A stretch of DNA of 64,000 nucleotides, from contig NIVC01002285.1 of NCBI GenBank assembly GCA_002269645.1, forward strand, positions 1 to 64,000. The letters run 5' to 3'. The translations under genes and the position numbers were made by a program. The notes under the pieces are model-generated. The model searched no databases. It saw nothing but the letters and a program-made list of their open reading frames with translations, and was not told the DNA's origin. Shown here piece by piece: positions 22,976-64,000 of this stretch. Every line of letters starts with the position of its first letter. Within the stretch, counting starts at the first letter, position 1. The stretch comes from Macrostomum lignano (taxonomy: Eukaryota).

Positions 22976-23464
22976 AGAATCCAATATTCAAAATCCCGAG
23001 CAGCCTAACACAGATCCCGAATCCCCCAGTCTGCTCAGAAGCATTTCCCTGTCGGTTCAGAAAAGCGATCTGAATTCCCTTGCACAGCAGGGGCAGTGAA
23101 GCCACCTGCCATCCTCAATTGAATCTCCCTTCCCAAATCCTCAATTGAAACAGAGAACACGGAAACTCAATAGCTGCTATCGCAGGTGCAAACAGAACGA
23201 TGCCCCCCATTTCTATTTGAGCAGCAAATTCCTCAGCAAGCAGCAAACTCAAAGCAGATTTTTATCCGCTATCGAGTGTTGGCTCACTTCTCCTTGCACA
23301 CCTGCTGCAGTTGCCAGCTGGCCTTGGGGTGATGCAATTTGTGCAGTTTGCAAAATTCTGCCGATTGGAGCAGGGAGGAAATATCCTTTGTCGACTTCTG
23401 GGGTGGACCCGTCCCCTCGTTGCGTTTCCAACTTATTCTGCGTTTTCCCAACCAACATAGAGAA

Positions 23465-23967
23465 AGCGTCACTGAATGGCGCCAGCGTCACTCAATTGGC
23501 GCCAGCGTCACTCAATTGGCGCCAGCGTCATTCAATTGGCGCCAGCGTCACTCAATTGGCGCTAGCGTCACTCAATTGGCGCCAGCGTCACTCAATTGGC
23601 GCTAGCGTCACTCAATTGGCGCCAGCGTCACTCAATTGGCGCCAGCGTCACTCAATTGGCGCCAGCGTCACTCAATTGGCGCCAGCGTCACTCAATTGGC
23701 GCCAGCGTCACTCAATTGGCGCCAGCGTCACTCAAAGCGCCAGCGTCACTCAATTGGCGCCAGCGTCACTCAATTGGCGCTAGCGTCACTCAATTGGCGC
23801 AAGCGTCACTCAATTGGCGCTAGCGTCACTCAATTGGCGCCAGCGTCACTCAATTGGCGCCAGCGTCACTCAATTGGCGCCAGCGTCACTCAATTGGCGC
23901 CAGCGTCACTCAATTGGCGCCAGCGTCACTCAAAGCGCCAGCGTCACTCAATTGGCGCCAGCGTCAC
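23465..23967. repeat. 20-bp minisatellite (GCGCCAGCGTCACTCAATTG) overlapping complexin stop codon
   Basis: About 25 copies; the TCA of the last unit (23964-23966) is the complexin TGA. Confidence 0.92.
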
Positions 23968-26594: not shown

Positions 26595-28674
26595 GGCTGC
26601 TGACTGCACCGAGGCGTTTTGTCTCCGCAAAGCTGTGTTTTTTTATAGAAAAATCTCCTTGAGTTGCCGCCCTGTCGATGAGGCAGAGGGTGACGGGATG
26701 CAGACGCTAAGGCTGGTGCTTTAGAAAGCAAGGAATCTGTTGATGGATGGAGCCGAGCGCAGGGGTTGTTAAGGGGGGAATTTATTTTTAAACTCCGCTC
26801 TCAGCGGGCTGAGGTTGCCATCCCGGCAGGCCTGCATGCATTGGCTGAGGGGGGGCACGGAGACCCGAGGGGAGCTCAGGACAGATCCCCGAGCTGGCAT
26901 GCGGCTCGGGTAATGAGACACTGCCGGGTACTCGGGCCGGGCAAGGGGAGGGCGGAGCTCGGCTCTGCTCCGAAAAATACAAAGCAGGTAAGAATTCCGA
27001 AGATGGAAATGGACTTCGAATACGACACCCGGGAGAAGCAGCGAACCCTGAGGTAGTTTCCCAGCCGACCCTTAGCAACCTGAGCTGGAAATGGCGTAGC
27101 GCTCAGAGAGACAGGCCTTTTGCTCTGGCGAGTCGATGATTCAGAGGGAATCTGTGGCGGATGAGTCGGAAATTCACTCCCGAGTGCACCAGCGCCCCCC
27201 CCCCCACCGAGCAGATGCGATCCTACTCAGTCTAGTCCACCCGAAGCCGCTGCCTGCCTTCTTTTTTATTCAGACCCAACTGGGGGATCTTAAGCTAGTT
27301 AGCTCCCCAATTAATTTTCCCCTACAGACAGTCTTCCCCTCACAACCCGGACTCCCATCGCTCACCCGGAATCTCCCCCTTATCGCCGCTCGTCCTCACA
27401 TCTAAGAAGGCTAATTTTCAAGCCCCAGCTCTTCTCAGAGAGCAATTCTCAGAGGGCGGCATCTTTGCCAGAAGTCGGGGCGCGGAGGCTGGGATTGAAC
27501 TAATGTTGATGAGGCGGCTCGCGGGGATGAAAGGGGCGGAGAGAGGCAGGCCTCAGTTTTCAGTCTGTTTCATCTGTTCGGATTTACGAGTACATTAAAA
27601 ATTCGCTTTTTTATAACATCCGCAATAGACTACTAATTTTTTCAAGTAAGTAGTGTGATAAGAATACACGGCAGCTCTGAAATTTCACTGATTTTTATCA
27701 TCAGGATACGAGTAAAAGGTTGATTATACAAACAAAATCGACAGACCAAAAACATTTTACCGATGAAAGGGTCTTGGAGATTGTTGGATATAAATAGTTG
27801 AATTCCTGCAATGCTCAATTCAAAAGTTCAATTTAATAGCCTGCTCAAGAACCCTCCTGAGATTAGAGTGCAGTCCAAAGCACTTCAAGCAGCTGATTGA
27901 TGAGCTGTGTTTTATGATTTCTGTTTTGTGGTGGAAAATTCTGGCTAACAGTTTAAAAGCTACTCAATGAGCCTTTGCTATCTTCATGCTTTTTAAAATA
28001 TTTTCTGCGCATCAGGTGGTGTTCTGAAATGGCAATCATTCCGAGATTATTCTGGGCCGAGATCGTCCTAGAGGGATCTGCTGTTTTGATTCTGCTTTTT
28101 TATCTTTTCTGTGTTTTTTGAATATTTCTCTCACACTATAGCAAACCATAAATGAATAATATTTTTCTCCTAGCAAATCATCTATTTAATTGTTAAAATA
28201 CTTTGGAATTCAAAAAGCAATGATCAATTTTGCTCGAAAACGGTTTGCAGTACTTGCAGGGTGTACAAGGCTTGCAGGGTGTGCAAGGCTTAAGGGTGTA
28301 CAAGGCTTAAGGGTGTACAAGGCTTAAGGGTGTAGTCGTACAAGATATTGCACGGGGGTTTTAATAGATATTTTGTTTTAGTAAACAAAATTTCCAAGGG
28401 CAATTGGCAGTCAGTATTGTAGGATTAAAATTTTTCATGTCTTATTGTTTCATTAATGATACTGTCTGAGCACTAACTTACTCAGCAACAAAAGTTTTGA
28501 TGCAGCCGTCACAGCCGTGTCCGAATTCTTGAGAGAAAATCTGCAGGAATAACAACTGATTAAGTCTTAGGCCTCGTCCCAAGAAATCTTATATATTATC
28601 TTATCGCTGGCTTGGAGCAACTCACTTGGCTCCCAATTCTGCCGCCGTGACACAAACTGCGTAAATAGTTTACA

Positions 28675-29612
28675 GAGTGGAATCGGATTGAGTGGAGATC
28701 TATATTGCGGTCTGCCTGGTCAGAGTGGAATCGGATTGAGTGGTGATGTACATTGCAGTCTGCCTGGTCAGAGTGGAATCGGATTGAGTGGTGATGTACA
28801 TTGCAGTCTGCCTGGTCAGAGTGGAATCGGATTGAGTGGGGATGTACATTGCGGTCTGCCTGGTCAGAGTGGAATCGGATTGAGTGGGGATGTACATTGC
28901 GGTCTGCCTGGTCAGAGTGGAATCGGTTAGTGGGGATGTACATTGCGGGCTGCCTGGTCAGAGTGGAATCTGATTGAGTGGGGATGTACATTGCGGTCTG
29001 CCTGGTCAGAGTGGAATCGGATTGAGTGGGGATGTACATTGCGGTCTGCCTGGTCAGAGTGGAATCGGATTGAGTGGGGCTGTACATTGCGGTCTGCCTG
29101 GTTAGAGTGGAATCGGATTGAGTGAGGATGTACATTGCGGGCTGCCTGGTCAGAGTGGAATCGGTGAGTGAGGATGTACATTGCGGTCTGCCTGGTCAGA
29201 GTGGAATCGGTGAGTGGGGATGTACATTGCGGTCTGCCTGGTTAGAGTGGAATCGGATTGAGTGGGGATGTACATTGCGGTCTGCCTGGTCAGAGTGGAA
29301 TCGGATTGAGTGGGGATGTACATTGCGGTCTGCCTGGTCAGAGTGGAATCGGATTGAGTGGGGATGTACATTGTGGTCTGCCTGGTCAGAGTGGAATCGG
29401 ATTGAGTGGGAATGTACATTGCGGTCTGCCTGGTCAGAGTGGAATCGGATTGAGTGAGGATGTACATTGCGGGCTGCCTGGTCAGAGTGGAATCGGATTG
29501 AGTGGGGATGTACATTGTGGTCTGCCTGGTCAGAGTGGAATCGGATTGAGTGGGGATGTACGTTGCGGTCTGCCTGGTCAGAGTGGAATCGGATTGAGCG
29601 GGGATGTACATT
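28675..29612. repeat. 48-bp minisatellite (GAGTGGGGATGTACATTGCGGTCTGCCTGGTCAGAGTGGAATCGGATT)
   Basis: About 20 copies; 16-aa ORF periodicity. Confidence 0.92.
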
Positions 29613-30120
29613 AATGCATAAGTTGGGGTTTTAAGAATCCAATGTACTTTTTTGTTGCGTCGCCGAGCTGCAATTTGCTTGAGAAGCTGCTTGAACCTCG
29701 AAAAGAGAAACATCCAGACGGGGTTCCAATGCAGAGGCTCGTCAGGATCCCTTCAACAGTAATTAAGAACTTTGATCGGCCGATGAGGAACCTATAAAAG
29801 AATCTGAAGAGCAGTTTGATTGGCCCGGGCTGGGTTCCTGCATAAATAATAGATCAGGGGATGCCAACGCCCTGCGCTCAGAATGGTCTCTGGGGCTGCT
29901 GAAGAACTAATACAGGGGGCTGTGCCGCTGCCCTGCCATGACCTCCCCGGCATGAAAAATTAATGCAGGAGCCCTGAGTGAGTAACTCAGCTGCCGGGTG
30001 GCTGCGGCAGCGGACCCGCCTATCAAACCGACCAGCAGGTATTTATCAGGGATTTGCTGACAAGACAAAAATTATACTGATTTCTTCCAAAGAGAGACTG
30101 CCTCTACTCTTCCTGTCGAT

Positions 30121-36693
<6,573 letters not shown>

Positions 36694-39548: not shown

Positions 39549-40734
39549 CAAACCATTTGGACTGATCGGTTTGTTGATCGAGTCAGATCGATAAATTTGA
39601 TCGATTCGCCTCACCCATCCGATTGCTGTGAATTCGAGCTCTGCTCATTCTCAAGTTCGATCAGATCTGCCAATATCGGGGTGGGGGTTCTGTACAGAAG
39701 CACGATAAAACAAAGACCCCAGCAACCGCACAGATCAGGAGCCGCTCCTCACCCTCCAGCCGATCCCCCTGCGAGTTCGAGCGAGCCCGAGGGTTCGGGG
39801 CAGCCTCCGCAGTTTCTGAAATTATTAAATTCTCGCTGTATTGCTCCGACACAACAAAACGCGGTGGAGAGCAGTGCTTTGACCGGCTCAGTGCCAGGCG
39901 CCCCCCTTTCCCTGAACTCGGCAAATGATTTTTGAGCACGATTTCGCGTTCAAGATGGTCGCTTATTGCGAGCGAGAGATCGAGTTGCGGGTGAAACCCG
40001 ACTCCAGATTGGTAGGGCTGTAATGAGTTCATCCATCAGTCCCTGCCCAGCAGCTCACCCAGGTGAACAGTCAGAATGCAGCATGTCAGGAGAAGGCCAG
40101 CCAGTAGCGGTGTGCAGATCAACACTCTGAAACAGTTTGCAAGCTTCGGACTTAAAAAAACTCGTGTTTTACGATAAGTTCGATTTGTCTTAAGCAATGG
40201 ATTACCTGTTGATGCCGAGTGACATTGCGGAGATCAGGTGCTGCTTGAAAATCGAGTTTTTTGTATAACAGATCAGACCAGAGCCTCGGTCGGAGCAAAG
40301 TAGCTGTTGAGAACCCCGCCAGTTGCCAAGCTTTTAGGCTAAACGTGTCGCCTCCTCTCGAGACCCTGATTGGACGGCTGGGTTGCCTCCGGCTGCAGGA
40401 TTCGCTCAACAGGTGGGCTGCCCGGGCTGCTCAGCTGGACTGCATGCGGATGTGTCTCAGCAGGGGGAGGCTAACTGGGGATTGTAAATTAACGAAGCAA
40501 TTGATTAAAAGACCAATATTACTGGCTTTAGCTTGCTTGCAGGGGGATTTCGGCACTGGAAGCAGGCTATGAGAACAGTTACTTTTAAAAGACAGAGCTA
40601 AATTATGAGAATTTGCAACTAATCATATCACCTGATGAAATGAATGAAAGAGCTTTTAAGCTTCCGAACTCAACAATAGTGCGCTTCATCTGGCATCCCA
40701 TTCACTTAGTAAATTTTCACTGTATTCACCTTCT

Positions 40735-41523
40735 GCTATCTACTGTCTGCTATCTACTGTCTGCTATCTACTGTCTGCTATCTACTGTCTGCTATCTACT
40801 GTCTGCTATCTACTGTCTGCTATCTACTGTCTACTATCTACTGTCTGCTATCTACTGTCTGCTATCTACTGTCTGCTATCTTCTGTCTGCTATCTACTGT
40901 CTGCTATCTTCTGTCTGCTATCTACTGTCTGCTATCTACTGTCTGCTATCTACTGTCTGCTATCTACTGTCTACTATCTACTGTCTGCTATCTACTGTCT
41001 GCTATCTACTGTCTGCTATCTTCTGTCTGCTATCTACTGTCTGCTATCTACTGTCTGCTATCTACTGTCTGCTATCTACTGTCTGCTATCTACTGTCTGC
41101 TATCTACTGTCTGCTATCTACTGTCTGCTATCTACTGTCTGCTATCTACTGTCTGCTATCTACTGTCTGCTATCTACTGTCTGCTATCTACTGTCTGCTA
41201 TCTACTGTCTGCTATCTACTGTCTGCTATCTACTGTCTGCTATCTACTGTCTGCTATCTACTGTCTGCTATCTTCTGTCTGCTATCTACTGTCTGCTATC
41301 TACTGTCTGCTATCTACTGTCTGCTATCTACTGTCTGCTATCTACTGTCTGCTATCTACTGTCTGCTATCTACTGTCTGCTATCTACTGTCTGCTATCTA
41401 CTGTCTGCTATCTACTGTCTGCTATCTACTGTCTGCTATCTACTGTCTGCTATCTACTGTCTGCTATCTACTGTCTGCTATCTACTGTCTACTATCTACT
41501 GTCTGCTATCTACTGTCTGCTAT
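40735..41523. repeat. 14-bp minisatellite (CTATCTACTGTCTG)
   Basis: About 56 copies. Confidence 0.95.
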
Positions 41524-42128
41524 GCTGTTTATACCGTCTTGCAGTCTGCAGCCATTGAGCTAAAATCGAAGGTATTTCCGACTTCCAAAGTAAAAAAACT
41601 GCACTTAATTCTAAGTGCTGTTAAGTTATAAATGCAGGATAATGAAAATGGAACCAGACGTAATTGAAAGCCTTAAAGCAATTAAAACGATTTACGCCCA
41701 CGTCAACTGTTGGAGACGGGCACTGTATTGTTCCATTGTACTCAAGCATTTCTCAAACACTTTGCAGCCAGCTCAATGGAAAATTGGAGTAATTATGCTT
41801 AATTGCGTTATTTTTTTAAATAGCTATTAAATTTTACTTCATTTAAAATAAACCCCAGCCGCTCCTGACTCTCGCTCTGTATTCTATTTGTTCGCTCAAG
41901 GAAATCAGGTGACTCTATGATCACGAGCTCGCAATAAAAGTTGTGAAAGAGTACGGCGTCTACTCTTTTTTTCAGTAGTTTGTCTGCGCAGTGTCGCTAA
42001 AATTATGGTCCAGCTAAAATTTCCTTTCCTTCCTGAGGGCCTTTGTGGCCTCAGGAGCATATGGGGTTAGGAATGAACATCAAGCATTTGTCTCGATGTA
42101 CACAAGTGAATGCACGAAGGACGAAACT

Positions 42129-43780: not shown

Positions 43781-43985
43781 TTAGTTTTGGGCCTGTTGCC
43801 ATGCTCTGAAGCACGGTTCAAGGCACAAGCTTGGCTGCCCGTTGCCAGCGGCACAGAGAAAGGCAGTTCGCTTCTGCAGGCCAGCATTGCTGCAAATTCG
43901 ACAGTGCATTGTTGGGTGTCGCTGTGTGGCAGTAGCTGGCAAGCGCGTTGGCAGATGCAGCGCAGCAGCAACATTTTGCTCGAGG

Positions 43986-44027
<42 letters not shown>

Positions 44028-45540
44028 GGGAGCCTTCCACCTCGCAAGCGCCCAACGCCGGTATCGCAGACTAAAATTCGCTGACATGCTTCTAAATAAT
44101 GCAAGAACGTGCGGGAACCGCCAATGTGCTTACAGGCAATAAAGGAGTTGAGAACAAGTTGCAGCAAGAGATAAGAGGCCAGCTTGAAAAACCACTTCTG
44201 CGTTCTTCTACTTGTCTTGTAGGGCTCACAACTAGCGTCCATCCTGTCCACTCCTCCCATGCTGTGATTGTAGTCTAGAGCTGTCTGAGACTTCAGCAGT
44301 TGCTGCTCCTGACCGCCCGCTGAACCCTTGTAACTTGCACACAGTTGGCCGAGCCGGCACTGTCTGGCATGTACACGGTCTTTAGGCCAGAGGCTCGCCG
44401 ATCCACAATCTTCACAGCAAGCAGATCCCCACGCCTAGAAAAGGCGTTGGATGGTGGGTGCAACACCTGCTGCTTCAGAGCCGCGGGAACGCCGCGTTGT
44501 GCTCGCATGCACTGTGCCTGTCAACAGAGTGTCTGTCTGGAGCAACCAGTCAGCGAGCCGTGCCGAGCAAAACCAGGTATCACAGAAGATCCTGTACCCG
44601 AGGTCCAAGATATCCCGAGACAGTTCTACGACGATGAGTTTCGAGAGCGACAGCTGCTGCGCATCCTGGCCGAACAGGTTGTTTTGGGCCGCAGTGGAGT
44701 GGATCAGAAAGTTCCACAAATAGCCGCTGTTCGATTCGGCTAGACAATACAGCTTGATGCCGAGCTTTGCCTTTTTGTTTGGCATGTACTGAAGAAAGTG
44801 GAGCCTACCTTTGTAAAGTAGCAATGACTCGTCAACAGAAATATGTTGATGTGGCATGTACTTATTTTGACAGATGGACTGGACTTTGTTCAAAAAAGGT
44901 CGATCTTGCTAATCGGATCGGCTTCGTTCACCTCCGTGCAATCGTAGCAGCGAAACCAGGTCATGGTGAGCTGAAACCTGTTACGCGACAGGCATGACTC
45001 ATGGTGGAAGAAGTCCTGATGGTATATTAGATCGGTTGACCAATACATGCTAATATCTGGCTTCTGTACTACTCCCATGTGGAGCAGAATTCCGATAAAC
45101 TTCTTCACTTCATTCAGGTTGCATGGCTTCCAATTTAGGAGCTTCCATGGCAGCTCTCCGTTTTCTTGTTGAATTTGCGTGACAGCTCTGTCTGATCTGG
45201 CGCTTGTCCAGTCGCACAAACTTTGCAGCAGACTGTCGGGAAGAAACTGACCAAGGATAGCAGCCACACCATTTTCGATGTTGTCCGGCACAAGAAAATC
45301 CGGATGCAGACCAGGCAAGCCGAGAAACTCGATAAGTGGGTTGGGCCGATGATCCGTTTCCGGAGTGGTATCATGCCAGTTATCTTCGATGTTGTCTGGC
45401 GGATTCACAATCTGGACCTCCTCAGGGTCACTCTGCTCATCAGAGGAGCCTCCACTGGTACCAGATGCAGTCACGTATGATTCGTCATCTGAGTCGCTAT
45501 CCAAGCCCAAATTTTGAAGGGTTGGATTGCCAGTTTGCAT
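43781..45540 (-). mobile_element. piggyBac-family transposase (about 586 aa if three 1-nt indels are corrected)
   Basis: Acidic N-terminus, EVKKFIGILLHMG..YWST..LSRNRF, ISVDES..KGRLHFLQYMPNK..KLGIKLYCL, GYRIFCDTWF, LTGTV, DYNHSMGGVD, KWFFKL and a C-terminal CRIC..C..LCLEPCF domain. Frame breaks near 44903, 44505 and 44315. TIRs not found. Confidence 0.9.
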
Positions 45541-47790: not shown

Positions 47791-48424
47791 GTTGTAGTGT
47801 TTCCTTTAGTACTTGAAGACTTGGAAGTACCCAGAAGTACCCAATCTCACTAATGCACTTCGCAACTTTCACGGGTATTTCAGTAAAATTTGCACGAACT
47901 TCGAGTGCAGCGCCCTTTCACTCTGCTTGAGGAGGCTATGTTTCGAGCACGTGATGCGTCGGGCCCCCGAAGCCCTTGAAGAAGAAAAAGCACACTCGAG
48001 AAGCTCGGACCGACACAACAGAAGGGGCAAAGATGCGGTTGTTCATTTTCTGTCCTTCATTCGACGAACCCAATGCACTGATCACAGTTATTATGTCACT
48101 TTTATTGATGGCCTGACGGTAAGGAATTGGACGCTCCGCCCCCTCCCCAAGTGGTAATTAGCACTCTTTGGAAGCCTTTAAATAGCTTTAAACAACATCC
48201 GAATGTCGTAAATGTTCTACAGATTCTTCGTCTTTTCGTAATAATAAATAGGATTGAATACTTCTGTCATTGCGAGGTCAGCTTTTCCTGTTCTATCAGA
48301 GTGCGACCAGTGGCCGGGTGCAGCTACCGTCCTTCATGTTCTCTTGTAGCTTCTTCGCTGCGTCCCGATGTAGCACTCATACTTCATTGCACGATTCTCC
48401 ACAATGTCTACCTTCCTACTATAG

Positions 48425-48945
48425 CTGGTGTGGAAGCCAGTTAGTAAGCTGCATGGTGCGGAAGCTGGTGTGGAAGCTGGTGGGAAAGCTGGTGTGAAAG
48501 CCAGTCATGAAGCTGGTGTGGAAGCTGGTGTGGAAGCCAGTCAGGAAGCTGGTGCCGAAACTGGTGTGGAAGCTGGTCAGGAAGCTGATGTGGAAGCTGG
48601 TCAAGAAGCTGGTCAGGAAGCTGGTGTGGAAGCTGGTGTGGAAGCCAGTCAGGAAGCTTGTGTGGAAGCTGGCGTGAAAGCCAGTTAGGAAGCTGGTGCC
48701 GAAACTGGTGTGGAAGCTGGTCAGGAAGCTGATGTGGAAGCTGGTCAAGAAGCTGGTCAGGAAGCTGGTGTGGAAGTTGGTCAGGAAGCTGGTGTGAAAG
48801 CTTGTGTAAAAGCCAGTCATGAAGCTGGTGTGGAAGCCAGTCAGGAAGCTGGTGTGGAAGCTGGTGTGGAAGCTGGTGTGAAAGCCAGTCAGAAAGCCAG
48901 TCAGAAAGCTGGTCAGGAAGCTGGTCAGGAAGCTGGTGTGAAGGT
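48425..48945. repeat. 12-bp-based repeat (GGAAGCTGGTGT / GGAAGCTGGTCA)
   Basis: About 43 variant units. Confidence 0.88.
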
Positions 48946-49164
48946 CAGCTCGCATATCCAGCAATCCCAGTCGAATTCTGAGTCTTCATTGGAGTGCCGA
49001 GTGCCGAACTGATCGGCCATTGGTCGGCAGAAATTCCTTCAACCCTTGCCCAATTCCCCAAAAAGCCAAGGCAGAGCCGATGGGCAAGGAAAAAGTCACG
49101 CGAAGAGAGGAGCTTAAATTAGCCTGCCGCAGAAAGATCCAGCAACGCAACTGCACCGGCTCCG

Positions 49165-52100
49165 ATGATGGAGTCGAACTCGAGCCTGTCGGGCGGAGCT
49201 GCGCTGCACAGCCAGGCCATGAGCAGCGGCAAGGTGGCCGCCACGGCTGTCTACCTGCTGATTGTGGCCGTCGGCCTGTTCGGAAACAGCCTGGTGATCA
49301 TCACGGTGCTCATCGATCGGCGAATGCGGGCGAGCGTCACCAATCTGTACATTCTGAACCTGGCTGCCGCCGACCTGTTGTCCCTGCTGCTGGCGGTCTG
49401 GCAGATTGTGCTGCACCTCCTGTCCGAGGAGTGGCTGCTGGGGCTGGCGCTGTGCAAGGCGCAGCGGTTCGCCATGACAACAGCACTGTATGCCTCTGTC
49501 ATCACTCTCACCATCGTCTGTGTGGAGCGGTGAGTTTGTAGGGGAGCTTTAACTCAAGCAGTAATGCTATTTCTATGACCCATGTGCCCTCACACAGGCA
49601 CATGCTCACAGGGGGTACAGCGCCCTGATGTTCTCATTATACAATCTATGTGCCTTGGTGGTTGGCCTTCGTGTGCGTGAATCTATTAGCTTGCACAGCA
49701 GTCCCTGACAGCAGTCCCTGACAGCAGTCCCTGACAGCAGTCCCTGACAGCAGTCCCTGACAGCAGTCCCTGACAGCAGTCCCTGACAGCAGTCCCTGAC
49801 AGCAGTCCCTGACAGCAGCCAGTCCCTGACAGAAATCCCTGACAGCAGTCCCTGACAGCAGTCTCTGACAGCAGTCCCTGACAGCAGTCCCTGACAACAG
49901 TCTCTGACAGCAGTCCCTGACAGCAGTCCCTGACAGCAGTCCCTGACAGCAGTCCCTGACAGCAGCCAGTCCCTGAGAGCAATCTTTGACAGCAGTCCCT
50001 GACAGCAGTCTCTGACAGCAGTCCCTGACAGCAGCCAGTCCCTGAGAGCAATCTTTGACAGCAGTCTCTGACAGCAGTCCCTGACAGCAGTCCCTGACAG
50101 CAGTCCCTGACAGCAGTCCCTGACAACAGTCCCTGACAGCAGTCCCTGACAGCAGTCCCTGACAGCAGTCCCTGACAGCAGTCCCTGACAGCAGTCCCTG
50201 ACAGCAGTCCCTGACAGCAGCCAGTCCCTGGCAGAAATCCCTGACAGCAGTCCCTGACAGCAGTCTCTGACAGCAGTCCCTGACAGCAGTCCCTGACAAC
50301 AGTCTCTGACAGCAGTCCCTGACAGCAGTCCCTGACAGCAGTCCCTGACAGCAGTCCCTGACAGCAGTCCCTGACAGCAGCCAGTCCCTGAGAGCAATCT
50401 CTGACAGCAGTCCCTGACAGCAGTCCCTGACAGCGGTCCCTGACAGCAGTCCCTGACAGCAGTCCCTGACAGCAGTTGGCCTACAACAGCCAGTGAAGGC
50501 CATTTAAATCCGGAAGCTTCAGATAAGGAAGCGGGGTTCGCACCTCGGTGGCACCTGACGGATTTGACGGATTCGGGTGAACCGGAAGCGACGCCCTGGA
50601 TTAACTATAGTCCCAGCTTTTCTGCAAGCGCCGCAGTCAGCTCTGGACCGACAAGCTTAAGTCGGACAGGTCAATTCAGCAAATTGATTCTGTGTTGCAG
50701 CTAGAATCGCCAGTCAATAATTCATCAGCCTGATGGCTTCCTCTGCAGCCTCCCCTGCGCTGCCCCATCGGCTGATAAAAAACACAGCGGCTCCGCTCCC
50801 CGCTCGGCAACCGAGATCGAACAGATTCTTTTGATATCCTTGAAGCTTTCCCAGTTCAGAATAAAAAAGGCCTAAGACATGCGCTCCGACCGTAGCTCGT
50901 ACATCATGTCACGGAGTTCTTGGAAGGCCTTCTCCAGTGTCTCATCTGGCCTCATCTGGTCGAATCATCTAAGACTCATTTAAAACTCAGTCCAACATTC
51001 ATTGCTACATGCATTGACGTTTGATCTGAGCTGCCGAAAAAGCCTTGCAAGAAGCCAGAGCTTCAAGAAAACGAGGAACAATCTCGCAATGTCCCCTTCC
51101 CGACCGAGAAAAGTTTAAGAAGACGAGTAGAAATCGGAGCTCCGGCTTTTCTCCGCCAAAATCTCACAGTCCCTGGGGAGAAGTTCGGGATTTGAAATTC
51201 GAGCGGAGCCAGCAGAAACCATCAGGAAGTTGAAATCTTACAGGGCCAGGCCAGAACCCTCCTCTATCTGGCGGATTCTGGCGGCAGTTCGCCAATCCAT
51301 TAGTCAGGCTCCGAAGTCTCCGGAAAATGGGGCTCCCTACGCTCAGTGAACTTGTTTTCAGCTGAGTAGTACTCGAAGGAGTTGAGGAACATCTACCCCG
51401 AACAATGCTCTCAAAATGAATATGGGAATCAGTGTAGAGCGTAAATCATTGAGTATGAGTATGGGCAGTTTATCAATTATTTAGAGAATTCAGGCAATCG
51501 AGTTGAGTCATTGGTGCAGAATCCTTACTTGAGAATAGATATGTATTTATGCTTCGGCTTTGGGGAAAAAGGAAAAGGAGGGCCGCAGAAGTCCCATTAG
51601 GCAGCCAAGCAGATCCCACGCACCAGACTGGCGGAGATTCTGTGCTGCAGAAAGGGTGGGTTGGGAGTCACGAGGACGAACTGTCAGCTCTGCTTGAGCT
51701 GGCGGAAGCAGAGCGCTGACAGACTGGGGGCTTTCTGTCTTCAGCAAAAGTGGCAACGGATGTCCTGGGTTTTCTTTTCCTTTCGTTTCCTGGAACTTTT
51801 AGAAAATTCAAGTTTGCTGACAGATTCTGTTAAACATTGTTTAGCTATTTCTCTGTAGCAGTTGAGTGTCATTATTAAAATAGATAAGAAAAAGTCCTAC
51901 GAAAATAAGCGTGATCTCGATCTAGGCAACGATGGGTGGGGTGTCAGTGACACAACAAGTGACCGGTGTGGGGTATCAGTGACCCAGCAAGTGACCAGTG
52001 TGGGGTGTCAGTGACACAGCAAGTGACCGGTGTGGGGTATCAGTGACACAGCAAGTGACCAGTGTGGGGTGTCAGTGACACAGCAAGTGACCGGTGTGGG

Positions 52101-53404
52101 GTATCAGTGACACAGCAAGTGACCAGTGTGGGGTGTCAGTGACACAGCAAGTGACCAGTGTGGGGTATCAGTGACCCAGCAAGTGACCAGTGTGGGGTGT
52201 CAGTGACACAGCAAGTGACCAGTGTGGGGTATCAGTGACACAGCAAGTGACCAGTGTGGGGTGTCAGTGACACAGCAAGTGACCGGTGTGGGGTATCAGT
52301 GACACAGCAAGTGACCAGTGTGGGGTGTCAGTGACACAGCAAGTGACCAGTGTGGGGTATCAGTGACCCAGCAAGTGACCAGTGTGGGGTGTCAGTGACA
52401 CAGCAAGTGACCAGTGTGGGGTATCAGTGACCCAGCAAGTGACCAGTGTGGGGTGTCAGTGACACAGCAAGTGACCGGTGTGGGGTGTCAGTGACACAGC
52501 AAGTGACCGGTGTGGGGTGTCAGTGACACAGCAAGTGACCGGTGTGGGGTGTCAGAGGCGGTGTCAGCCAGTACAAGCAGGTCCGGCCCACCGCACCCGC
52601 AGCTACGTGGCCATCGTGCACCCGATGCGCGCCCACCTGCTGTTCTCCCGCCGCCGCGCCCTGCTGAGCATCCTGGCCTGCTGGCTGCTCGGCCTCGCCC
52701 TGGCCAGCCAGAGCCTCGCCTTCCTCGCCGTGGTGCCGCAGTCGCCGGGCGGCCGGCTGCGCTGCTTCGCCAAGTACGGCGCCACCAGGCAGGAGCACGA
52801 GGCCGCGATGAAGTGGGTCGGCGCCGCCGAGATCTGCCTTTTCTACTTCCTGCCGCTGGGCCTGCAGATCGTGCTGTACAGGCGGATGACCCTCGCCCTG
52901 TTCGGCGGCGGCGGCGGCGGTCAGGGCGGCGGGCCTGGCCGAGACCAGAGCCAGCCGAGGAAAAACAACGAAGCGAGCAGCACGGCCGGGCGCAAGCAGG
53001 TGGTGAAGATGCTGATCGCCTGCGTTGCCGTATACTTTGTGTGCTACCTGTCCAAGCTGCTGGAGGTCCTGTTCAACATCATCGACTTCCATCCCATCCG
53101 GCGGGACAGCGCCCAGGTGATCACCATGGCGATGGTGTACGCCAATTCCGCTGTGAACCCGCTGCTGTACACCGTGTTCAGCAGCAACTTCCGGCACCAG
53201 TTCCGGCTGACGTTTCGGCGCTGCTTCGGCCGGAAAAGCGGCGACGGAGGTGCCGCAGCTCTGGGAGGGCCCGGAAGGCGGTTCGACAGCCTGGCCAGCA
53301 ACAGAGGCGCCGGGATGCTGCAGCAGCAGCCGCAGCCGCAGAAGGCTTCGCTCAAGACTGAGGCTGCCGATCCCAGCATTCCAATGCTGCCTGTGGAGCC
53401 ATGA
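49165..53404 (+). CDS. Class A (rhodopsin-like) GPCR, peptide-receptor type, ligand unknown; exons 49165-49529 and 52603-53404; 388 aa
   Basis: GN(TM1), NLAAADL(TM2), W..G...CK, ER|YVAIVHP (intron splits ERY, phase 2), CW(TM4), FLPL(TM5), RKQVVKML(TM6), NSAVNPLLY..FSSNFR(TM7/H8). Exons total 1167 nt. Confidence 0.93.
49695..50475. repeat. 13-bp minisatellite (CAGCAGTCCCTGA) in GPCR intron
   Basis: About 58 copies. Confidence 0.93.
51935..52555. repeat. 32-bp minisatellite (CAGTGACACAGCAAGTGACCAGTGTGGGGTGT) in GPCR intron
   Basis: Period 32 (52201, 52233); about 19 copies. Confidence 0.93.
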
Positions 53405-57673: not shown

Positions 57674-60270
57674 ATGACGCGCTCGCTCCGCTTCCTGCAC
57701 TACTCGGCCAGCCGCATCAAGCCTGGCTGCTGCGCGTCCTTCTCTGCTCTGCTGCTGCTTCTGCTGGCGTTGCTTTTTCTGTTTCTTGTAAGTACTTTGA
57801 CGTCTTTAAAGTTCCTAGACCCTGAGGCTAGGCTTGCCTGTGTCACGATTCCCTCAGGATGAGTTGGGCAGAGTGGCTTTGGGGGTAAACGCGTCTTGAC
57901 TCTCGTGCCGCTAAATCTGGTTCGGTTGTGTACGAAAATTGACCGCGGGCTGACGATTAGAAAGTCAGAAGGCCGTCGAACACCCTGTGTGAGCGTTTGA
58001 GTGAGTGAGCGCCTGTGTACAGTATTCACGCGCTTGCATGTGCTCAGGACTCAGCGCTGGTTGTGGGATGATGTTGATGAAGGCGTTGCGCCTTGGTGCC
58101 CACAGCCCATCTGCGAATAATTTTTCCTTCAACATTTTCCCCTGACTCTATTTATCAACCCACAAGAGACCGGCCGGTTTCTGCAAGCAGCAGCGGCTGC
58201 AGCCACCCGCACCCATCCCGGGTAGTGGCCGCATTCCCAAGCTGCTGCACTATGTATTCAGGAGCGCCGAAGTTTTCTCAAACTATTCGCCGCTGATCAG
58301 CTCATGCCTGCACTTCAATCCCGACTGGACTGTCTACCTGTGGCGGGATTCCGACGTCAGACAGCTGATCCGCTTGCACTATCCGGACATGGCTAAGCTG
58401 TTCGAGGCCTACTCTACCGACCTGATGCGGTCTGACGCTGCCAGATACCTGATCTTGCATCATCTGGGAGGTAGTCGCGCTTGCTTCGTTTGTGTAAATT
58501 TCCCTAGATCCGTGATGACGCATCAAGCGCAATGATTCTTACCGTGCGATTGACGTCATCTCAAAGTCAATTAGCTATTATCCAAACATCACGAGCAGCA
58601 TGCTCCATTTAAGAATAAAAATGTAAAACAGAGTCAAAAAGCGTTTAATACACAACAGGGGTCTCCTGAGGCCAAGGGGCGTCGCTGTTTCGTTAGGGCC
58701 CACAGCAATCCGTCTGGTGCTCGGTTTCCCGGGCAACGAGCTGGCCGACTCTCTGGTCGAAGCTCCAGCTGCCTGTCGGGTCCTGACCCTCTCTGGTTCC
58801 GATCCCCAGCACGATCACTAACCGTCAGATTGAATGGACTGGGGCTGACACTCACAATAAAAGGTGTTAACTGCCGCCAATTCCGAGTGGCAGTCTCGTA
58901 TATCCCCAAGACAGCTCCGAAAGTATAGGCAGATCAGCAAAGACACCCAGGACATCACCAGGACCCTCACAGGCTACAGGAACTCTGCCCCCATTCAGTG
59001 GCCTTGACAATGGACCGGAATTTCATCTGCCAATGCCTCCACCAACAACAACCCGACGAGCCTCTTTCTTCCTTAGCGAATAACACGCTGCAGAAGGCCC
59101 TCCGCACCTCCATGGCTGGCTCCGAGCCGCGCCGCAAACCTGACCTCCTTCTGGCGACGCCCCTTCTTGAGGATTCGCAAACGAAGTAGCAGAATTCTCC
59201 ACCCTCAGGAGTGTACATCGACTTGGACATCGAGTGTGTGCAGCCGTTCTACCCAACCCTGGCCAACTACACTGCCTTTCTGGACCGGGAACGCACCGAC
59301 CAGACAGCCGTGATCTGGCAGACCCGGCTGGCGGCGATGAACAGCGCCATGGGCTCGGTGCCTGGGCATCCGTTCTTCGCTTTCGTGGCGCGGCGGATGC
59401 AAGCTGGTGCCGATGAAGGCGACCAGTTGGCTGGCGGTGGTGGCGGTGGAAAGCCGAAAGCGACCAGTGCATATGTGGCCACGGGGCCGGGGATGCTCAC
59501 CGAAGCCTACAGAGAGTGGCAGCTGCGACGCCAGCCCGGGATGAACAGCAATGAAGACGTGGTTCTGCTTGGCTGGGATTTCTTCTCTGGTTTTGTTGAG
59601 TCACGAGCTGATCTGTGGAGGATCTGCAGGGCTCGGTTCGGAGGTGAGCTTTTGTCTGAAATTTTGTTCAAAGCATATCTAACTGACTAAACTCCCTTCC
59701 TAACTACCTTATCTACGTAAGCACCTACATACCTAACCTACTTGTCTAGCTACCTTAGTAAAAACCTGTTAGAATGCACGGAAATACATATCTTGTATCT
59801 TATCTAAAAATTTAACAAGTGACCGATTTATCAAACTTTAATAAAAAACGTGACCTTTTCTATAAATTAGAACTATTGATTCACTTGAGTGGCTATATAT
59901 ACTTTTGTTATTACTGTAACGCTACATGTACTTTGCAAACCTTTGCCAAACAATTTAAAAGCGTAAAATTTAAAGGTAACTGCTGACAAATCAATGAAGT
60001 GATTGATACTGTTGACATGATTTTTTTGTATTTTTTGTAGGTATCGTGAATGGCAGAAGGCGAAAGCGACCGCGGGGCAGGCGATCCATGTCGTTCAGAA
60101 TCTGCCGCAGAATTCTTCGCACACAGTCCTGGAAGCGTGAAGAGTCAACAACCAACACTATCGCATTTCACCGGTTTATGCACCTGGGATACCCGGAGAA
60201 TCAGGCCAAAATATGGGGCGTTTTTAATGTCACCATGCGCTTTCCAAGAATTTCGTTTTACTATCATTAG
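57674..60270 (+). CDS. Type II membrane glycosyltransferase, GT32 / DXD (SUR1/CSH1/OCH1-like); exons 57674-57787, 58167-58470, 59209-59643, 60041-60270; 360 aa
   Basis: N-terminal anchor ALLLLLLALLFLFL; IPKLLHYVF..NPDWTVYLWRD..YP..MRSDAARYLILHHLG|GVYIDLD..MNSAMGSVPGHPFF..TGPGMLT. All junctions GT/AG and in phase; 1083 nt. Confidence 0.88.
58680..59190 (+). mobile_element. Decayed RNase H-bearing LINE fragment in GT32 intron 2
   Basis: FVRAHS..PGNELADSL (RNase H end, W[VI].[GA]H.G..GNE.AD.L), DITRTLTGY and FICQC, broken by stops and frameshifts. Confidence 0.42.
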
Positions 60271-60779
60271 GACCATTTGATTAGGTACAGTTTACTGTTT
60301 CTGTGCACAACAATTCAATTTAGGGATTTTATCTAATGCTAAAGACGCCAAGGCGTACAATATACTGCAAACAAACAATCGAATGCTTGTTAGATTGCAA
60401 CTTAGTTAAAATGCTCCTTTGATGCTTGTAGTCGATCGTTTTAATTAGTACTTAGGCTTTTTACACAGTTAAGCTTTTATTTTCAATATTCTGCTTGCCT
60501 GCCTACCCATCTGTCTATCGTCCTTATTAAGTGCATATTGTCCGCTCAACTCTCGGACTTTGTCCAACTCTCGAGCTTTTCCCTCTAATAACGATAATTT
60601 ATTGAAATTAAACATTTCAATAAATTAATAAATTTCGAAGAATAAATTTCTTCGAAACGCAGTGTCAATTTTTTTTCCAAAAGTATACGTTTTATAAACG
60701 TAATAATCATTGTTGTTTACTGTTTTTGATAAAGTAAATTGTTTACTGTTTCTGATAAAGTTAAAATTATTAAAGATAA

Positions 60780-63497
60780 ACGTATTCATTTCCCGATTGA
60801 CATTCAGATTTACATTCAAATTTTAACAAAGCCGCTGTAACTTTTCTTTACTTGAACGAAACGCTTTAAATTTTTACAAAAACTTTGACGCAATCAAGAA
60901 AAAAAACTACGTAAAATATCTCAGCATTTAAAAATAGACTGTACAAATTATTCACACATAAAGTTTGTTCCTATCTCCTTAGTGTATTATTATGCAACTC
61001 AACAAAACAGCTTAAAATACACGCAGAGCTACGAAACTTTATTTTTCTCTTGACGCACGCGAGATGCGTTGGCAAGTCAAAAATCAGCACCCTAGCTTAA
61101 AGCCTGTACGAGTTATTCACCTGCAAACTGTGTTCCTATCTCCGTAGTGTATTTTGGGGGTCCAGCTTGACATTCGCTGACAGACACTTCTACTCAACGC
61201 AGAGCTACGAAACTTTATTTTTCTCTTGACGCATGCGAGATGCGTTGGCAAGTCAAAAATCAGCACCCTAGCTTAAAGCCTGTACGAGTTATTCACCTGC
61301 AAACTGTGTTCCTATCTCCGTAGTGTATTTTGGGGGTCCAGCTTGACATTCGCTGACAGACACTTCTACTCAACGCAGAGCTACGAAACTTTATTTTTCT
61401 CTTTACGCATGCGAGATGCGTTGGCAAGTCAAAAATCAGCACCCTAGCTTAAAGCCTGTACGAGTTATTCACCTGCAAACTGTGTTCCTATCTCCGTAGT
61501 GTATTTTGGGGGTCCAGCTTGACATTCGCTGACAGACACTTCTACTCAACGCAGAGCTACGAAACTTTATTTTTCTCTTGACGCACGCGAGATGCGTTGG
61601 CAAGTCAAAAATCAGCACCCTAGCTTAAAGCAGAGCTTCTCACCAGCAGCAAATCTGCCGGGCAAGATGCGCCTGATAATTCCTTGTACTTCTGCGGCAG
61701 AAGTATTTTTAAGAGCTAGCATTTGATGAAAAAGCAGCGGTAGAGATCTTTGCAAGTCGCTAGCTATGTCCCGTCTCATTAATGGGCCGTTCTGCTCCAT
61801 CCAGTAAAGAAGCTGAATGGCAGAATTGGCATAGCAGTCTGCTCCGCTATTTCTTAGTCCACAGAGAGGCTGCGGCTCTGAACTTCTTGATGATGTTTGT
61901 TTGGCAGCCTTTGCCCCTGAACTATGCTCTTGACGAGGCTCTGTTCTAACATTTTCCTCAGCAGGTAGAGATGTGTAAAGATTAGCGTTGAGGCTTTTAG
62001 GAAGCTGTGTATCAACGAAGCGGCGCTCAGGATATCGTTGGCGAAAGCAATCTGGGTCGTAGGCATAATGACCTAGGAGCAAAAGAACTGCCATTACATG
62101 GCAGTCACAGCCAGCTGTTCGGCTACCCAGAAAGAGGATCCACTGTTTAAAAAGTCTTCTGCATGGCTGCATGGTGTAGCAGACTCCCAATGAGTCCCGT
62201 TTTCGACTTCCGGGCTTCACCAGATGGCTCAAACAACTCCCGATCATGAGGACCCCACTAAAGCAGCGTAAAAATGATGCGATGCGTGCTCATTAAGGGA
62301 TGTGTGGCAGGGGGTCCGTACAGAAATTATTTTTAAGGCTCAGGTGGGTGACCCAGCTATATGACCAGAGCCGAATTTGTGAATTTTCTATCCCGTCATA
62401 TGTTTCCCATTAGATGAATTCCCTGACTGTAATCTCGTACAGTCTCTAATACTGGAATAACTCATACAGGCTTTAAGCTAGGGTGCTGATTTTTGACTTG
62501 CCAACGCATCTCGCGTGCGTCAAGAGAAAAATAAAGTTTCGTAGCTCTGCCTTGAGTAGAAGTGTCTGTCAGCGAATGTCAAGCTGGACCCCCAAAATAC
62601 ACTACGGAGATAGGAACACAGTTTGCAGGTGAATAACTCGTACAGGCTTTAAGCTAGGGTGCTGATTTTTGACTTGCCAACGCATCTCGCATGCGTAAAG
62701 AGAAAAATAAAGTTTCGTAGCTCTGCGTTGAGTAGAAGTGTCTGTCAGCGAATGTCAAGCTGGACCCCCAAAATACACTACGGAGATAGGAACACAGTTT
62801 GCAGGTGAATAACTCGTACAGGCTTTAAGCTAGGGTGCTGATTTTTGACTTGCCAACGCATCTCGCATGCGTCAAGAGAAAAATAAAGTTTCGTAGCTCT
62901 GCGTTGAGTAGAAGTGTCTGTCAGCGAATGTCAAGCTGGACCCCCAAAATACACTACGGAGATAGGAACACAGTTTGCAGGTGAATAACTCGTACAGGCT
63001 TTAAGCTAGGGTGCTGATTTTTGACTTGCCAACGCATCTCGCATGCGTCAAGAGAAAAATAAAGTTTCGTAGCTCTGCGTTGAGTAGAAGTGTCTGTCAG
63101 CGAATGTCAAGCTGGACCCCCAAAATACACTACGGAGATAGGAACACAGTTTGCAGGTGAATAACTCGTACAGGCTTTAAGCTAGGGTGCTGATTTTTGA
63201 CTTGCCAACGCATCTCGCGTGCGTCAAGAGAAAAATAAAGTTTCGTAGCTCTGCGTGTATTTTAAGCCGTTTTGTTGAGTTGCATAATAATACACTAAGG
63301 AGATAGGAACAAACTTTATATGTGAATAATTTGTACAGTCTATTTTTAAATGCTGAGATATTTTACGTGGTTTTTTTTCTTGATTGCGTCAAAGTTTTTG
63401 TAAAAATTTAAAGCGTTTCGTTCAAGTAAAGAAAAGTTACAGCGGCTTTGTTAAAATTTGAATGTAAATCTGAATGTCAATCGGGAAATAATTACGT
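60780..63497. mobile_element. Foldback / Mutator-like non-autonomous element, 2718 bp, with long modular inverted arms
   Basis: Left arm 60780-61631 is the reverse complement of right arm about 62455-63497. Termini ACGTA.../...TACGT; 9-bp TSD TAAAGATAA at 60771-60779 and 63498-63506. Arms contain a 176-bp unit (left period marks 61025, 61201, 61377, 61553; right 62471, 62647, 62823, 62999, 63175). Confidence 0.9.
61612..62247 (-). pseudogene. Gene fragment in the foldback core containing a USP (peptidase C19) Cys-box
   Basis: CGLRNSGADCYANSAIQLL (61863-61807) fits GL.N.GNTC[YF].N[SA].[LI]Q.L. No His-box; the ORF runs into the left arm and stops. Confidence 0.72.
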
Positions 63498-64000
63498 TAA
63501 AGATAATTAGTTTAAAAAAAGATATTTACTTTCGATTTTTCTCATTAGCTTTAACACCAACAACGAAAAAAGACATAATGTAGACATGTAGTGCAAGCAA
63601 AACCAAGAATGGACTCAATGGATCCTATATATTCACTTTTGTTATAGTGGTCATTTAAATAGGAAAATTGTTATAAGATTGAGGTGGGGGTGGAGAAGAA
63701 CTTTCTTAGAACGGTTGTTTTTGAATTTGCTGACACCAGTGAGGTGGGGCGGATTCCTCGTTTGAATTGCCGCCGGCGTTGAGTTCGCACGAATAAAACC
63801 GGAAAAACGCGCAGACGAATCACAACGAAATTTCTTCTCCTGTTTTACTCCGACAGCCGGGTTCTCAAGTCCGGGGGGAGGGTAGTTGTAATCGTAGCGG
63901 AGCGGTCGTATAGCGGCCCGGTCGTTCAGATCCGTAGACTCAATTGGTCTTGACACCGTAAATCTGCTTTGGAATTGTCGTACTGATTACTGTCAGTAGA

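What the first reader, a model, noticed from the sequence alone, without database searches (positions are those of the whole stretch)
60771..63506. Foldback/Mutator-like element with 176-bp modular arms carrying a deubiquitinase (USP) fragment: an animal Pack-MULE-like system
Seen directly: a perfect 9-bp TSD (TAAAGATAA), matching ACGTA termini, and near-identical inverted arms of about 850 and 1040 bp. Each arm has a unique outer part of about 245 bp plus 3.4 or 4.5 copies of a 176-bp unit. The core of about 820 bp has no recognisable DDE transposase, but its ORF has a USP Cys-box with the catalytic Cys and oxyanion Asn. Established: 9-bp TSDs and long repeat-built TIRs typify Mutator-related foldback elements, and gene-fragment capture (Pack-MULEs) is mainly documented in plants. 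The protease passengers I recall in DNA transposons are Ulp1/OTU types, not USP. Inference: a recently mobile family that either captured a host USP exon or derives from an undescribed autonomous transposon encoding its own deubiquitinase.
Basis: partly seen in the sequence, partly recalled or inferred. Interest (0 to 1): 0.85.

Follow-up and report, generated by a model that had tools for sequence, protein, structure and literature searches.

The report
Foldback transposon carrying a deubiquitinase remnant
A 2.7-kb mobile element in the flatworm Macrostomum lignano, with long repeat-built inverted arms and a 9-bp target duplication, looks like a gutted copy of a little-known transposon family whose transposase is naturally fused to a ubiquitin-removing protease, not an element that stole a host gene.

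Summary
A 2,718-bp element (60780-63497) sits between perfect 9-bp direct repeats (TAAAGATAA). Its arms are 852 and 1,043 bp and 98% complementary. Each arm is a 76-bp terminus, one diverged repeat unit, then 3.5 or 4.6 copies of a 176-bp unit. The core is 823 bp. The window is Macrostomum lignano contig NIVC01002285.1.

The "Mutator / Pack-MULE, captured host USP exon" reading is not supported. The core ORF carries a SWIM-like zinc-knuckle module followed by the first ~77 residues of a USP domain (Cys box only, below Pfam threshold). The same module order occurs in metagenomic proteins. P0007 (1,048 aa, 20 near-identical copies) is HTH + DDE + SWIM-like + complete USP. P0001, the closest relative (40% identity), has the complete USP. 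The DDE of this clade is the Harbinger/IS5 type (Pfam DDE_Tnp_4), not MULE and not Zisupton/KDZ.

Most likely the element is a non-autonomous deletion derivative of a transposon that encodes its own deubiquitinase.

Open points:
- A 9-bp duplication does not fit Harbinger-type elements, so the arms and the core may have different origins.
- No other copy, autonomous parent or empty site could be retrieved.

Interest is moderate.

The parts
60771..60779 (.). Left copy of the 9-bp target site duplication, TAAAGATAA
   Evidence: It is identical to 63498-63506 and directly abuts the terminus.
60780..60855 (+). Left terminus, the 76 bp of the arm that are truly unique. It starts ACGTA and carries TTGACATTC and a second ACATTCA.
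60856..61020 (+). Diverged copy of the repeat unit in the left arm, 165 bp
   Evidence: alignment to the 176-bp unit; 53-nt block at 81% identity.
61021..61631 (+). Left array of the 176-bp unit, 3.5 copies at 99% identity
61632..62454 (-). Core of 823 bp. It is a remnant of the C-terminal part of a transposase-USP reading frame, read on the minus strand. There are stop codons upstream of 62289.
61612..62247 (-). 211-aa ORF. It runs 21 nt into the left array, which supplies the stop codon.
61951..62130 (-). SWIM-like zinc-knuckle module and its conserved tail (LGSRTAGCDCHV...LLGHYAYDPD..F..Y....F.D...PKSLN). It is homologous to the C-terminus of DDE_Tnp_4-type transposases.
   Evidence: P0005-P0008, E 4e-6 to 3e-4 against the whole library; tblastn; hhalign, probability 97.5%, E 5e-12.
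61632..61863 (-). N-terminal ~77 residues of a USP (peptidase C19) domain. The Cys box has the catalytic Cys and an Asn at -5. The fragment is cut off by the junction with the array. There is no His box.
   Evidence: Searches (P0001, E 6e-28; P0001 passes Pfam UCH).
62455..63256 (-). Right array of the 176-bp unit, 4.6 copies in inverted orientation
63257..63421 (-). Diverged copy of the repeat unit in the right arm
63422..63497 (-). Right terminus, 76 bp. It differs from the left terminus at 2 positions (positions 6 and 8).
63498..63506 (.). Right copy of the 9-bp target site duplication, TAAAGATAA

Best explanation
This is a non-autonomous, internally deleted copy of a cut-and-paste DNA transposon in Macrostomum lignano.

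Its autonomous parents are inferred from metagenomic relatives. They encode one long protein: C2H2 fingers, a helix-turn-helix, a Harbinger/IS5-type DDE catalytic domain (Pfam DDE_Tnp_4), a C-terminal SWIM-like zinc knuckle, and in one sub-lineage a USP (C19) deubiquitinase.

In the window copy the DDE part and three quarters of the USP are gone. What remains is 823 bp covering the SWIM-like module and the USP Cys box, between two long inverted arms.

The arms (76-bp terminus plus tandem 176-bp units) carry a repeated motif, TTGACATTC, within a 53-nt conserved block. I infer that these are multiple transposase-binding sites. The element would be moved in trans by a full-length relative. It inserted into A+T-rich DNA with a staggered 9-bp cut.

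The USP fragment cannot be an active enzyme because it lacks the His box. In intact relatives the deubiquitinase is part of the transposase. I infer that it protects the transposase or repair factors from ubiquitin-dependent turnover, or modulates repair of the break.

Shown: the insertion anatomy, the homology of the core to transposase-USP proteins, and the DDE type of those proteins.
Inferred: that arms and core share one origin, trans-mobilisation, and the role of the USP.
For: - Insertion hallmarks: a perfect 9-bp duplication, matching termini and 98% complementary arms.
- Exhaustive phmmer search with the core ORF. P0001 scores E 6e-28 at 40% identity over residues 70-221 and has a complete USP (Pfam UCH E 1e-14). 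P0005-P0008 match the SWIM-like module.
- P0007 has a DDE, the module, and a full UCH domain (E 2.8e-12, profile positions 2-253).
- P0001 and P0007 are collinear. The P0001 contig also encodes P0007-like transposase residues 516-588 upstream of the USP.
- The family profile matches the window core at probability 97.5%, E 5e-12.
- DDE type. P0011 (60% identical to P0007) passes DDE_Tnp_4. The L008 ORF scores 68.9 bits on DDE_Tnp_4 and aligns with the P0007/P0010 profile from the DDE through the SWIM-like module at probability 99.4%, E 3.8e-21.
- The P0007 cluster has 20 members at 90% identity or more. Most are intact at 1,048-1,050 aa, so it is a multi-copy family.
- Relatives have tandem-repeat arrays next to the ORF, with copy-number differences between copies, as in the window arms.
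Against: - No DDE remnant lies in the element, and no autonomous copy lies in the window or in the 26-kb paralogous stretch.
- PHIS/Harbinger-type elements make duplications of 0-3 bp (PMC12730594). The one distant relative with visible inverted repeats (L015) shows at most a 3-4 bp duplication. So 9 bp does not fit the transposase type.
- Homology upstream of the SWIM-like module is not significant.
- The module has a 9-residue insertion and a Cys-to-Asp change relative to the family.
- Two breakpoints are needed to leave an internal ORF fragment between both arrays.
- No relative's termini or duplication could be recovered.
Confidence: 0.58

Rival explanations
1. Chimeric foldback element. 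The arms belong to a Mutator/Foldback-type family that makes 9-bp duplications. The core is a passenger, a fragment of a different transposon's transposase-USP gene that became trapped between the arms. This would be Pack-MULE-like capture, but of a transposon gene rather than a host gene.
For: - A 9-bp duplication and long repeat-built arms are typical of MULE, Rehavkus and Foldback elements (PMC6446971). They are not typical of PHIS elements (PMC12730594).
- The core is an internal ORF fragment bounded on both sides by mid-unit junctions with the arrays.
- L015, a distant relative of the transposase clade, appears to have only a 3-4 bp duplication.
Against: - Relatives of the transposase-USP gene themselves carry long tandem-repeat arrays next to the ORF.
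- No MULE-type sequence lies anywhere in the element.
- In bacteria, the IS903 group of the IS5 family makes 9-bp duplications (my own knowledge). A 9-bp cut is therefore not foreign to this DDE type.
Confidence: 0.25
2. Pack-MULE-like capture of an exon of a host USP gene.
For: The Cys box is canonical. Gene-fragment capture by elements with long inverted repeats is well documented in plants (my own knowledge).
Against: - The USP fragment is fused in frame to a transposase-specific SWIM-like module.
- The best homologues are transposase-linked USPs. Cellular-type multi-USP proteins match only 34-52 residues around the Cys box.
- No close M. lignano protein was found in 1.84 billion representatives. 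This is weak evidence, because gene calls on this assembly are sparse.
Confidence: 0.05
3. Local inverted duplication or long-read assembly artefact (missed-adapter palindrome), not a mobile element.
For: The assembly is PacBio-based and known to contain errors and excess copies (PMC10733133). Only one copy was seen.
Against: - A perfect 9-bp direct repeat lies exactly at the ends of the inverted repeat.
- The arms differ in unit number.
- The core is asymmetric and unique.
- The element lies 60 kb inside a 187-kb contig.
Confidence: 0.03

Closest known systems
Foldback-type elements of Drosophila (FB, Galileo, Tetris)
   Same: Very long inverted arms made of a terminal segment plus tandem units. 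Unit number differs between the arms. The core is short or variable. FB makes a 9-bp duplication (my own knowledge; Galileo and Tetris papers listed).
   Different: Galileo has a P-type transposase and FB is placed with Mutator. Here the only coding remnant points to a DDE_Tnp_4-type transposase fused to a USP. There is no sequence similarity to those elements. The host is a flatworm.
PIF/Harbinger-ISL2EU-Spy (PHIS) superfamily and bacterial IS5
   Same: Relatives of the core ORF have an HTH_Tnp_4-like region and a DDE_Tnp_4 catalytic domain with the DDE residues conserved.
   Different: PHIS elements make duplications of 0-3 bp, usually have short inverted repeats and often a separate Myb/SANT protein. 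Here the duplication is 9 bp and the arms are about 1 kb. The transposases of the relatives carry C2H2 fingers, a SWIM-like C-terminal knuckle and, in some, a USP.
DNA transposons whose transposase carries a ubiquitin-like-modifier protease
   Same: A cysteine protease of the ubiquitin/SUMO system is fused to, or encoded beside, the transposition enzyme. Examples are Ginger1 with OTU or Ulp1, MULEs with Ulp1, and Helentrons with OTU or VTD (PMC2836005; PMC9741609).
   Different: The protease here is a USP (C19), a different fold family from Ulp1 (C48), OTU and VTD.
Trichomonas vaginalis XP_001314237.1 (transposase_11 + Peptidase C19)
   Same: An IS4/IS5-type DDE transposase fused to a C19 ubiquitin hydrolase. 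Bao, Kapitonov and Jurka noted it in one sentence (PMC2836005).
   Different: It is a protist protein known only as a domain combination. I could not retrieve its sequence, so its relatedness to this clade is untested. No element structure was described for it.
Rehavkus (Mutator-related, arthropods and annelids)
   Same: 9-bp duplication, inverted repeats up to 400 bp, and a minisatellite near one end (PMC6446971).
   Different: Rehavkus transposases are MULE-like with a PHD finger. Neither was seen here.
Zisupton / KDZ
   Same: A large multi-domain transposase, found in marine invertebrates among other hosts.
   Different: Zisupton makes 8-bp duplications and its proteins hit Pfam PF18758 (PMC12730594, PMC9297572). 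None of the relatives hit PF18758.

Membership tests
Class II (cut-and-paste) transposon insertion | Terminal inverted repeats flanked by a target site duplication | tested here: met
   The duplication is 9/9 identical. The termini match at 26 of 28 positions and the arms are 98% complementary.
Class II (cut-and-paste) transposon insertion | Multiple copies in the genome, or an empty site in a paralogue or allele | not testable with these tools
   Only the window and 26 kb of contig NIVC01002164.1 were readable, and neither holds another copy. Twenty candidate ORFs near the element were not on record, so the paralogous site could not be fetched.
Foldback-type element (structural class) | Long inverted arms built of tandem units, with a short non-transposase core | tested here: met
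Mutator / MULE superfamily | 9-11 bp target site duplication | tested here: met
   (9 bp).
Mutator / MULE superfamily | MULE-type DDE transposase (Pfam PF10551) in the element or in its autonomous relatives | tested here: not met
   The element has no DDE. Proteins sharing its SWIM-like module hit DDE_Tnp_4 and not MULE.
Pack-MULE (host gene-fragment capture) | The internal fragment derives from a normal host gene | tested here: not met
   The fragment is contiguous with a transposase module. Its best homologues are transposase-linked. A host parent gene could not be searched for in the genome.
PHIS (PIF/Harbinger-ISL2EU-Spy) | DDE_Tnp_4-type catalytic domain | tested here: inconclusive
   Met in relatives: P0011 at 29.1 bits and the L008 ORF at 68.9 bits, against a cut-off of 24.8, and hhalign E 3.8e-21. 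The window element itself retains no DDE.
PHIS (PIF/Harbinger-ISL2EU-Spy) | Target site duplication of 0-3 bp | tested here: not met
   9 bp here. The PHIS values come from PMC12730594.
Zisupton / KDZ | KDZ transposase domain (PF18758) and 8-bp duplication | tested here: not met
   No PF18758 hit in P0007, P0010, P0005 or the L008 ORF. The duplication is 9 bp.
USP / peptidase C19 | Cys box with the catalytic Cys and an Asn at -5 | tested here: met
   GLRNSGADCYANS. The Pfam UCH hit is below threshold (E 0.0019, 18.3 bits against 23.9). All PDB hits are USPs. The homologue P0001 passes UCH at 55 bits.
USP / peptidase C19 | His box and the catalytic Asp/Asn, that is, a complete catalytic domain | tested here: not met
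   The ORF ends about 77 residues into the domain, at the junction with the array.
SWIM zinc finger (PF04434) | CxCxnCxH signature passing the Pfam threshold | tested here: inconclusive
   Relatives give only sub-threshold hits (E 0.03-0.04). The window copy reads GCDCH where the family has GCC[SA]H, and it has a 9-residue insertion.

The most novel reading that the evidence does not exclude
The element is the first structurally defined member (termini, arms, duplication) of an undescribed lineage of eukaryotic DDE transposons. The lineage would be IS5/Harbinger-related in its catalytic domain. It would also make 9-bp duplications and have foldback-type arms about 1 kb long built of tandem units. 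Its transposase would end in a SWIM-like knuckle and, in one branch, a USP deubiquitinase. A USP-class enzyme would then be an integral part of a transposase, in animals and marine plankton.
Probability: 0.4. Interest if true: 0.65.

Novelty: new variant of a known kind. Interest (0 to 1): 0.5.

Why it matters
Transposons are known to carry Ulp1, OTU and VTD proteases. This suggests that tampering with ubiquitin or SUMO marks helps transposition. A USP-class enzyme built into a transposase would add a fourth, independent recruitment and strengthen that idea.

The intact relatives (P0007 family, 20 near-identical copies) give a concrete, testable protein.

For M. lignano, a transgenesis model, an element with defined ends could also be of practical interest.

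Tried and rejected
- Word-indexed protein search with the ORF: no hit.
- Rfam on the window: nothing.
- Searches with P0007 and with the family alignment found only four further metagenomic proteins, none with a source name.
- The IMG/VR scan gave nothing.
- I tried to reach the paralogous site on NIVC01002164.1. The gene calls are sparse. Twenty ATG-to-stop ORFs within 10 kb of the element are not in the collection. The empty-site test therefore failed.
- I looked for inverted repeats and duplications in the relatives' contigs (L001, L003-L014, L020-L022). None had both ends. Only L015 has inverted repeats, which are old and have no clear duplication.
- I suspected that the stretch upstream of the ORF (..IENSQIRLWSYSWV..) continues the transposase 'PENW' region. 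Neither tblastn nor hhalign supports this, so I do not claim it.
- Zisupton (my recollection of a SWIM-plus-protease transposase) was rejected on PF18758 and on duplication length.
- Literature searches for USP or C19 in transposons found only the one-sentence T. vaginalis note. Gladyshev and Arkhipova 2009 could not be read.
Full report
**Where the window comes from.** The 2,151-aa ORF at 13768-20223 is recorded on NCBI contig NIVC01002285.1 at the same coordinates as in the window. That contig belongs to assembly GCA_002269645.1. This is the Mlig_3_7 assembly of the free-living flatworm Macrostomum lignano (PMC10733133). The assembly is known to hold mostly three paralogous copies of each region. 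A second contig, NIVC01002164.1, carries the identical gene and is 99.5% identical over 17 kb.

**The observation.**
- A 2,718-bp element (60780-63497) is flanked by a perfect 9-bp direct repeat, TAAAGATAA.
- The termini match at 26 of 28 positions and occur nowhere else in the window.
- The arms are 852 and 1,043 bp. The in-register 871-nt pair is 98% complementary.
- The arrays are 3.5 and 4.6 copies of a 176-bp unit at 99% identity.
- The unit variants occur in mirror order in the two arms. The right arm has one extra copy of one variant, as expected from slippage or unequal exchange inside an array.

Two refinements:
- Only the first 76 bp of each arm are unique. The rest of the "outer" part is an older, diverged copy of the same unit. 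A 53-nt block is kept at 81-83% identity.
- The 9-mer TTGACATTC occurs nine times in the window, against 0.68 expected. All nine are inside the element: once in each terminus and once per full unit. I take such reiterated blocks to be candidate transposase-binding sites. This is inference.

An assembly palindrome is unlikely. The duplication is exact, the arms are unequal, the core is asymmetric, and the element lies 60 kb inside a 187-kb contig.

**The core.** The 823-bp core holds a 211-aa minus-strand ORF, 61612-62247. The ORF runs into the left array, which supplies its stop codon. Stop codons lie upstream of 62289. The Cys box GLRNSGADCYANS gives only a sub-threshold Pfam UCH hit (E 0.0019, 18.3 bits against 23.9). 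All PDB sequence hits are USP catalytic domains (USP15, USP7, USP9X, USP2; best E 0.0014). It covers about 77 residues of a domain of about 300 residues and has no His box. It cannot be an active protease.

**What the core derives from.** A word-indexed search found nothing. An exhaustive phmmer scan of 1.84 billion representatives found nine proteins.
- The best is P0001 (E 6e-28, 40% identity over ORF residues 70-221). It has the same stretch (LGHYxYxPDxFRQRxPxRRFxDTxLPxxLN), then a linker, then a complete USP with Cys and His boxes (Pfam UCH E 1e-14).
- Four others (P0005-P0008) match the stretch just upstream. This is a SWIM-like zinc knuckle, C..C.IG.R..GCC.H, followed by LLG.Y. It scores below threshold on Pfam SWIM.
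- In P0007 (1,048 aa) this module sits between an N-terminal DDE region and a full C-terminal USP domain (UCH E 2.8e-12, profile positions 2-253).
- P0001 and P0007 are collinear. The P0001 contig also encodes, just upstream in another frame, P0007-like transposase residues 516-588 (E 6.6e-6).
- A profile of the family matches the window core at probability 97.5%, E 5e-12.
- Ordinary cellular-type USPs (P0002-P0004, P0009) match only the Cys box.

The USP piece is therefore part of a transposase-USP reading frame and not a captured host exon.

**Which transposase.** The DDE region of these proteins does not hit MULE (PF10551) or KDZ/Zisupton (PF18758).
- It gives weak hits to HTH_Tnp_4 and DDE_Tnp_4.
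- P0011, 60% identical to P0007, passes DDE_Tnp_4.
- A JGI metagenome scan found eleven more distant loci. One of them, the L008 ORF (751 aa), scores 68.9 bits on DDE_Tnp_4 and ends in the same knuckle.
- The L008 ORF aligns with the P0007/P0010 profile from the DDE to the knuckle at probability 99.4%, E 3.8e-21.
- The catalytic D, D and E are conserved in the alignments.

This is the Harbinger/IS5 type of transposase, not Mutator.

**What the relatives look like.**
- P0007 stands for 20 sequences at 90% identity or more. Most are intact at 1,048-1,050 aa. They come from ENA assemblies, including TARA Oceans, so this is a multi-copy and probably recently active family in some marine eukaryote.
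- In its longest contig (L020) the ORF is preceded, in the same frame and across a single stop codon, by a 580-aa ORF with two C2H2 fingers.
- The ORF is followed by at least 1.7 kb of tandem repeats with periods of about 60 and 102 bp.
- Copies differ in repeat number (L001 against L020).
- P0010, from TARA, has the C2H2 fingers, the DDE and the knuckle, but no USP.
- The USP is thus an accessory domain of one branch.

**Best explanation and its weak point.** The simplest reading is that the window element is a deletion derivative of such a transposon. It would be moved in trans through its arms. It would have lost the DDE part and most of the USP.

The difficulty is the 9-bp duplication. PHIS elements make 0-3 bp (PMC12730594). 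The only distant relative with visible inverted repeats is L015. It has 150-bp units in its arms and shows at most a GATT duplication. Nine base pairs with repeat-built arms is the Mutator, Rehavkus or Foldback pattern (PMC6446971).

So a real rival is a chimera: foldback arms of another family enclosing a fragment of a transposase-USP gene. I could not decide between the two. No relative's contig contains both ends. The M. lignano genome outside the window was not searchable. The paralogous site could not be fetched. From my own knowledge, the IS903 group of the bacterial IS5 family makes 9-bp duplications, so this cut length is not foreign to the DDE type.

I give 0.58 to the deletion-derivative model, 0.25 to the chimera, 0.05 to host-exon capture and 0.03 to an artefact.

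**Comparison with what is known.**
- Structurally, the element is a foldback-type element like FB, Galileo or Tetris.
- By the transposase of its relatives, it is nearest to PHIS/IS5.
- By the idea of a protease in a transposase, it parallels Ginger1 and MULEs with Ulp1 or OTU (PMC2836005) and Helentrons with OTU or VTD deubiquitinases (PMC9741609).
- For a USP (C19) the only precedent I found is one sentence on a Trichomonas vaginalis protein that combines transposase_11 and Peptidase C19. No paper in the library holds DDE_Tnp_4, UCH and transposase together.

I therefore rate it a new variant of a known kind. It is ordinary as a non-autonomous foldback insertion. It is unusual in pointing to a barely described transposase-USP lineage with an unexpected duplication length.

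**Verdict.** Observation confirmed. Interpretation partly supported. Interest is moderate (0.5).

Noticed in passing
window 13768-20223; L019 (NIVC01002164.1:99550-126005, reversed): There is a single-exon 2,151-aa DCDC1-like gene (DCX2_DCDC1, Ubiquitin_DCDC1, Cep120-like). An identical copy lies on a second contig that is 99.5% identical over 17 kb and more diverged in the repeats downstream. This is a paralogous subgenome block or a haplotig of the neopolyploid M. lignano assembly.
   Followed up: partly
window 43781-45540 (minus strand): A piggyBac-type transposase (DDE_Tnp_1_7 plus its zinc finger) is broken into three ORFs and contains a poly-Q run. It is a decayed piggyBac copy or a derived gene.
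   Followed up: partly
window 2410-2946, 6261-7055, 23145-24326, 28596-29713, 34511-35473, 36118-36693, 40613-41563, 48419-48964, 49606-50503: Many long minisatellite arrays show up as repetitive pseudo-ORFs on both strands. They take up a large share of the window.
   Followed up: no
window 60713-60764: A 26-bp tandem duplication (TTGTTTACTGTTT[T/C]TGATAAAGT[A/T]AA) lies a few bases upstream of the insertion site. The target region is very A+T-rich.
   Followed up: no
L020 202-5154, L022 115-5109: In the P0007 family the C2H2 ORF and the transposase-USP ORF are in the same frame, separated by a single stop codon that is kept in independent copies. This could be a short intron, a read-through, or a host with a reassigned stop codon.
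   Followed up: no
L015 116-3704: A distant DDE_Tnp_4 plus SWIM-like element from a JGI metagenome has inverted repeats about 150-300 bp long. The left arm is made of two 150-bp units. The arms are 78-82% identical, and a GATT duplication is possible.
   Followed up: partly
P0002, P0003, P0004, P0009: Four predicted proteins of 1,800-2,900 aa consist of four to six tandem, near-identical complete USP domains. They are either real tandem-USP genes or read-through models of tandem gene arrays.
   Followed up: no
window 52478-53404 and 59211-59690: There is a rhodopsin-family GPCR exon (7tm_1) and, 1.1 kb upstream of the element, a 159-aa ORF with no Pfam hit. The element lies between or within host genes, but the gene structure was not resolved.
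   Followed up: no
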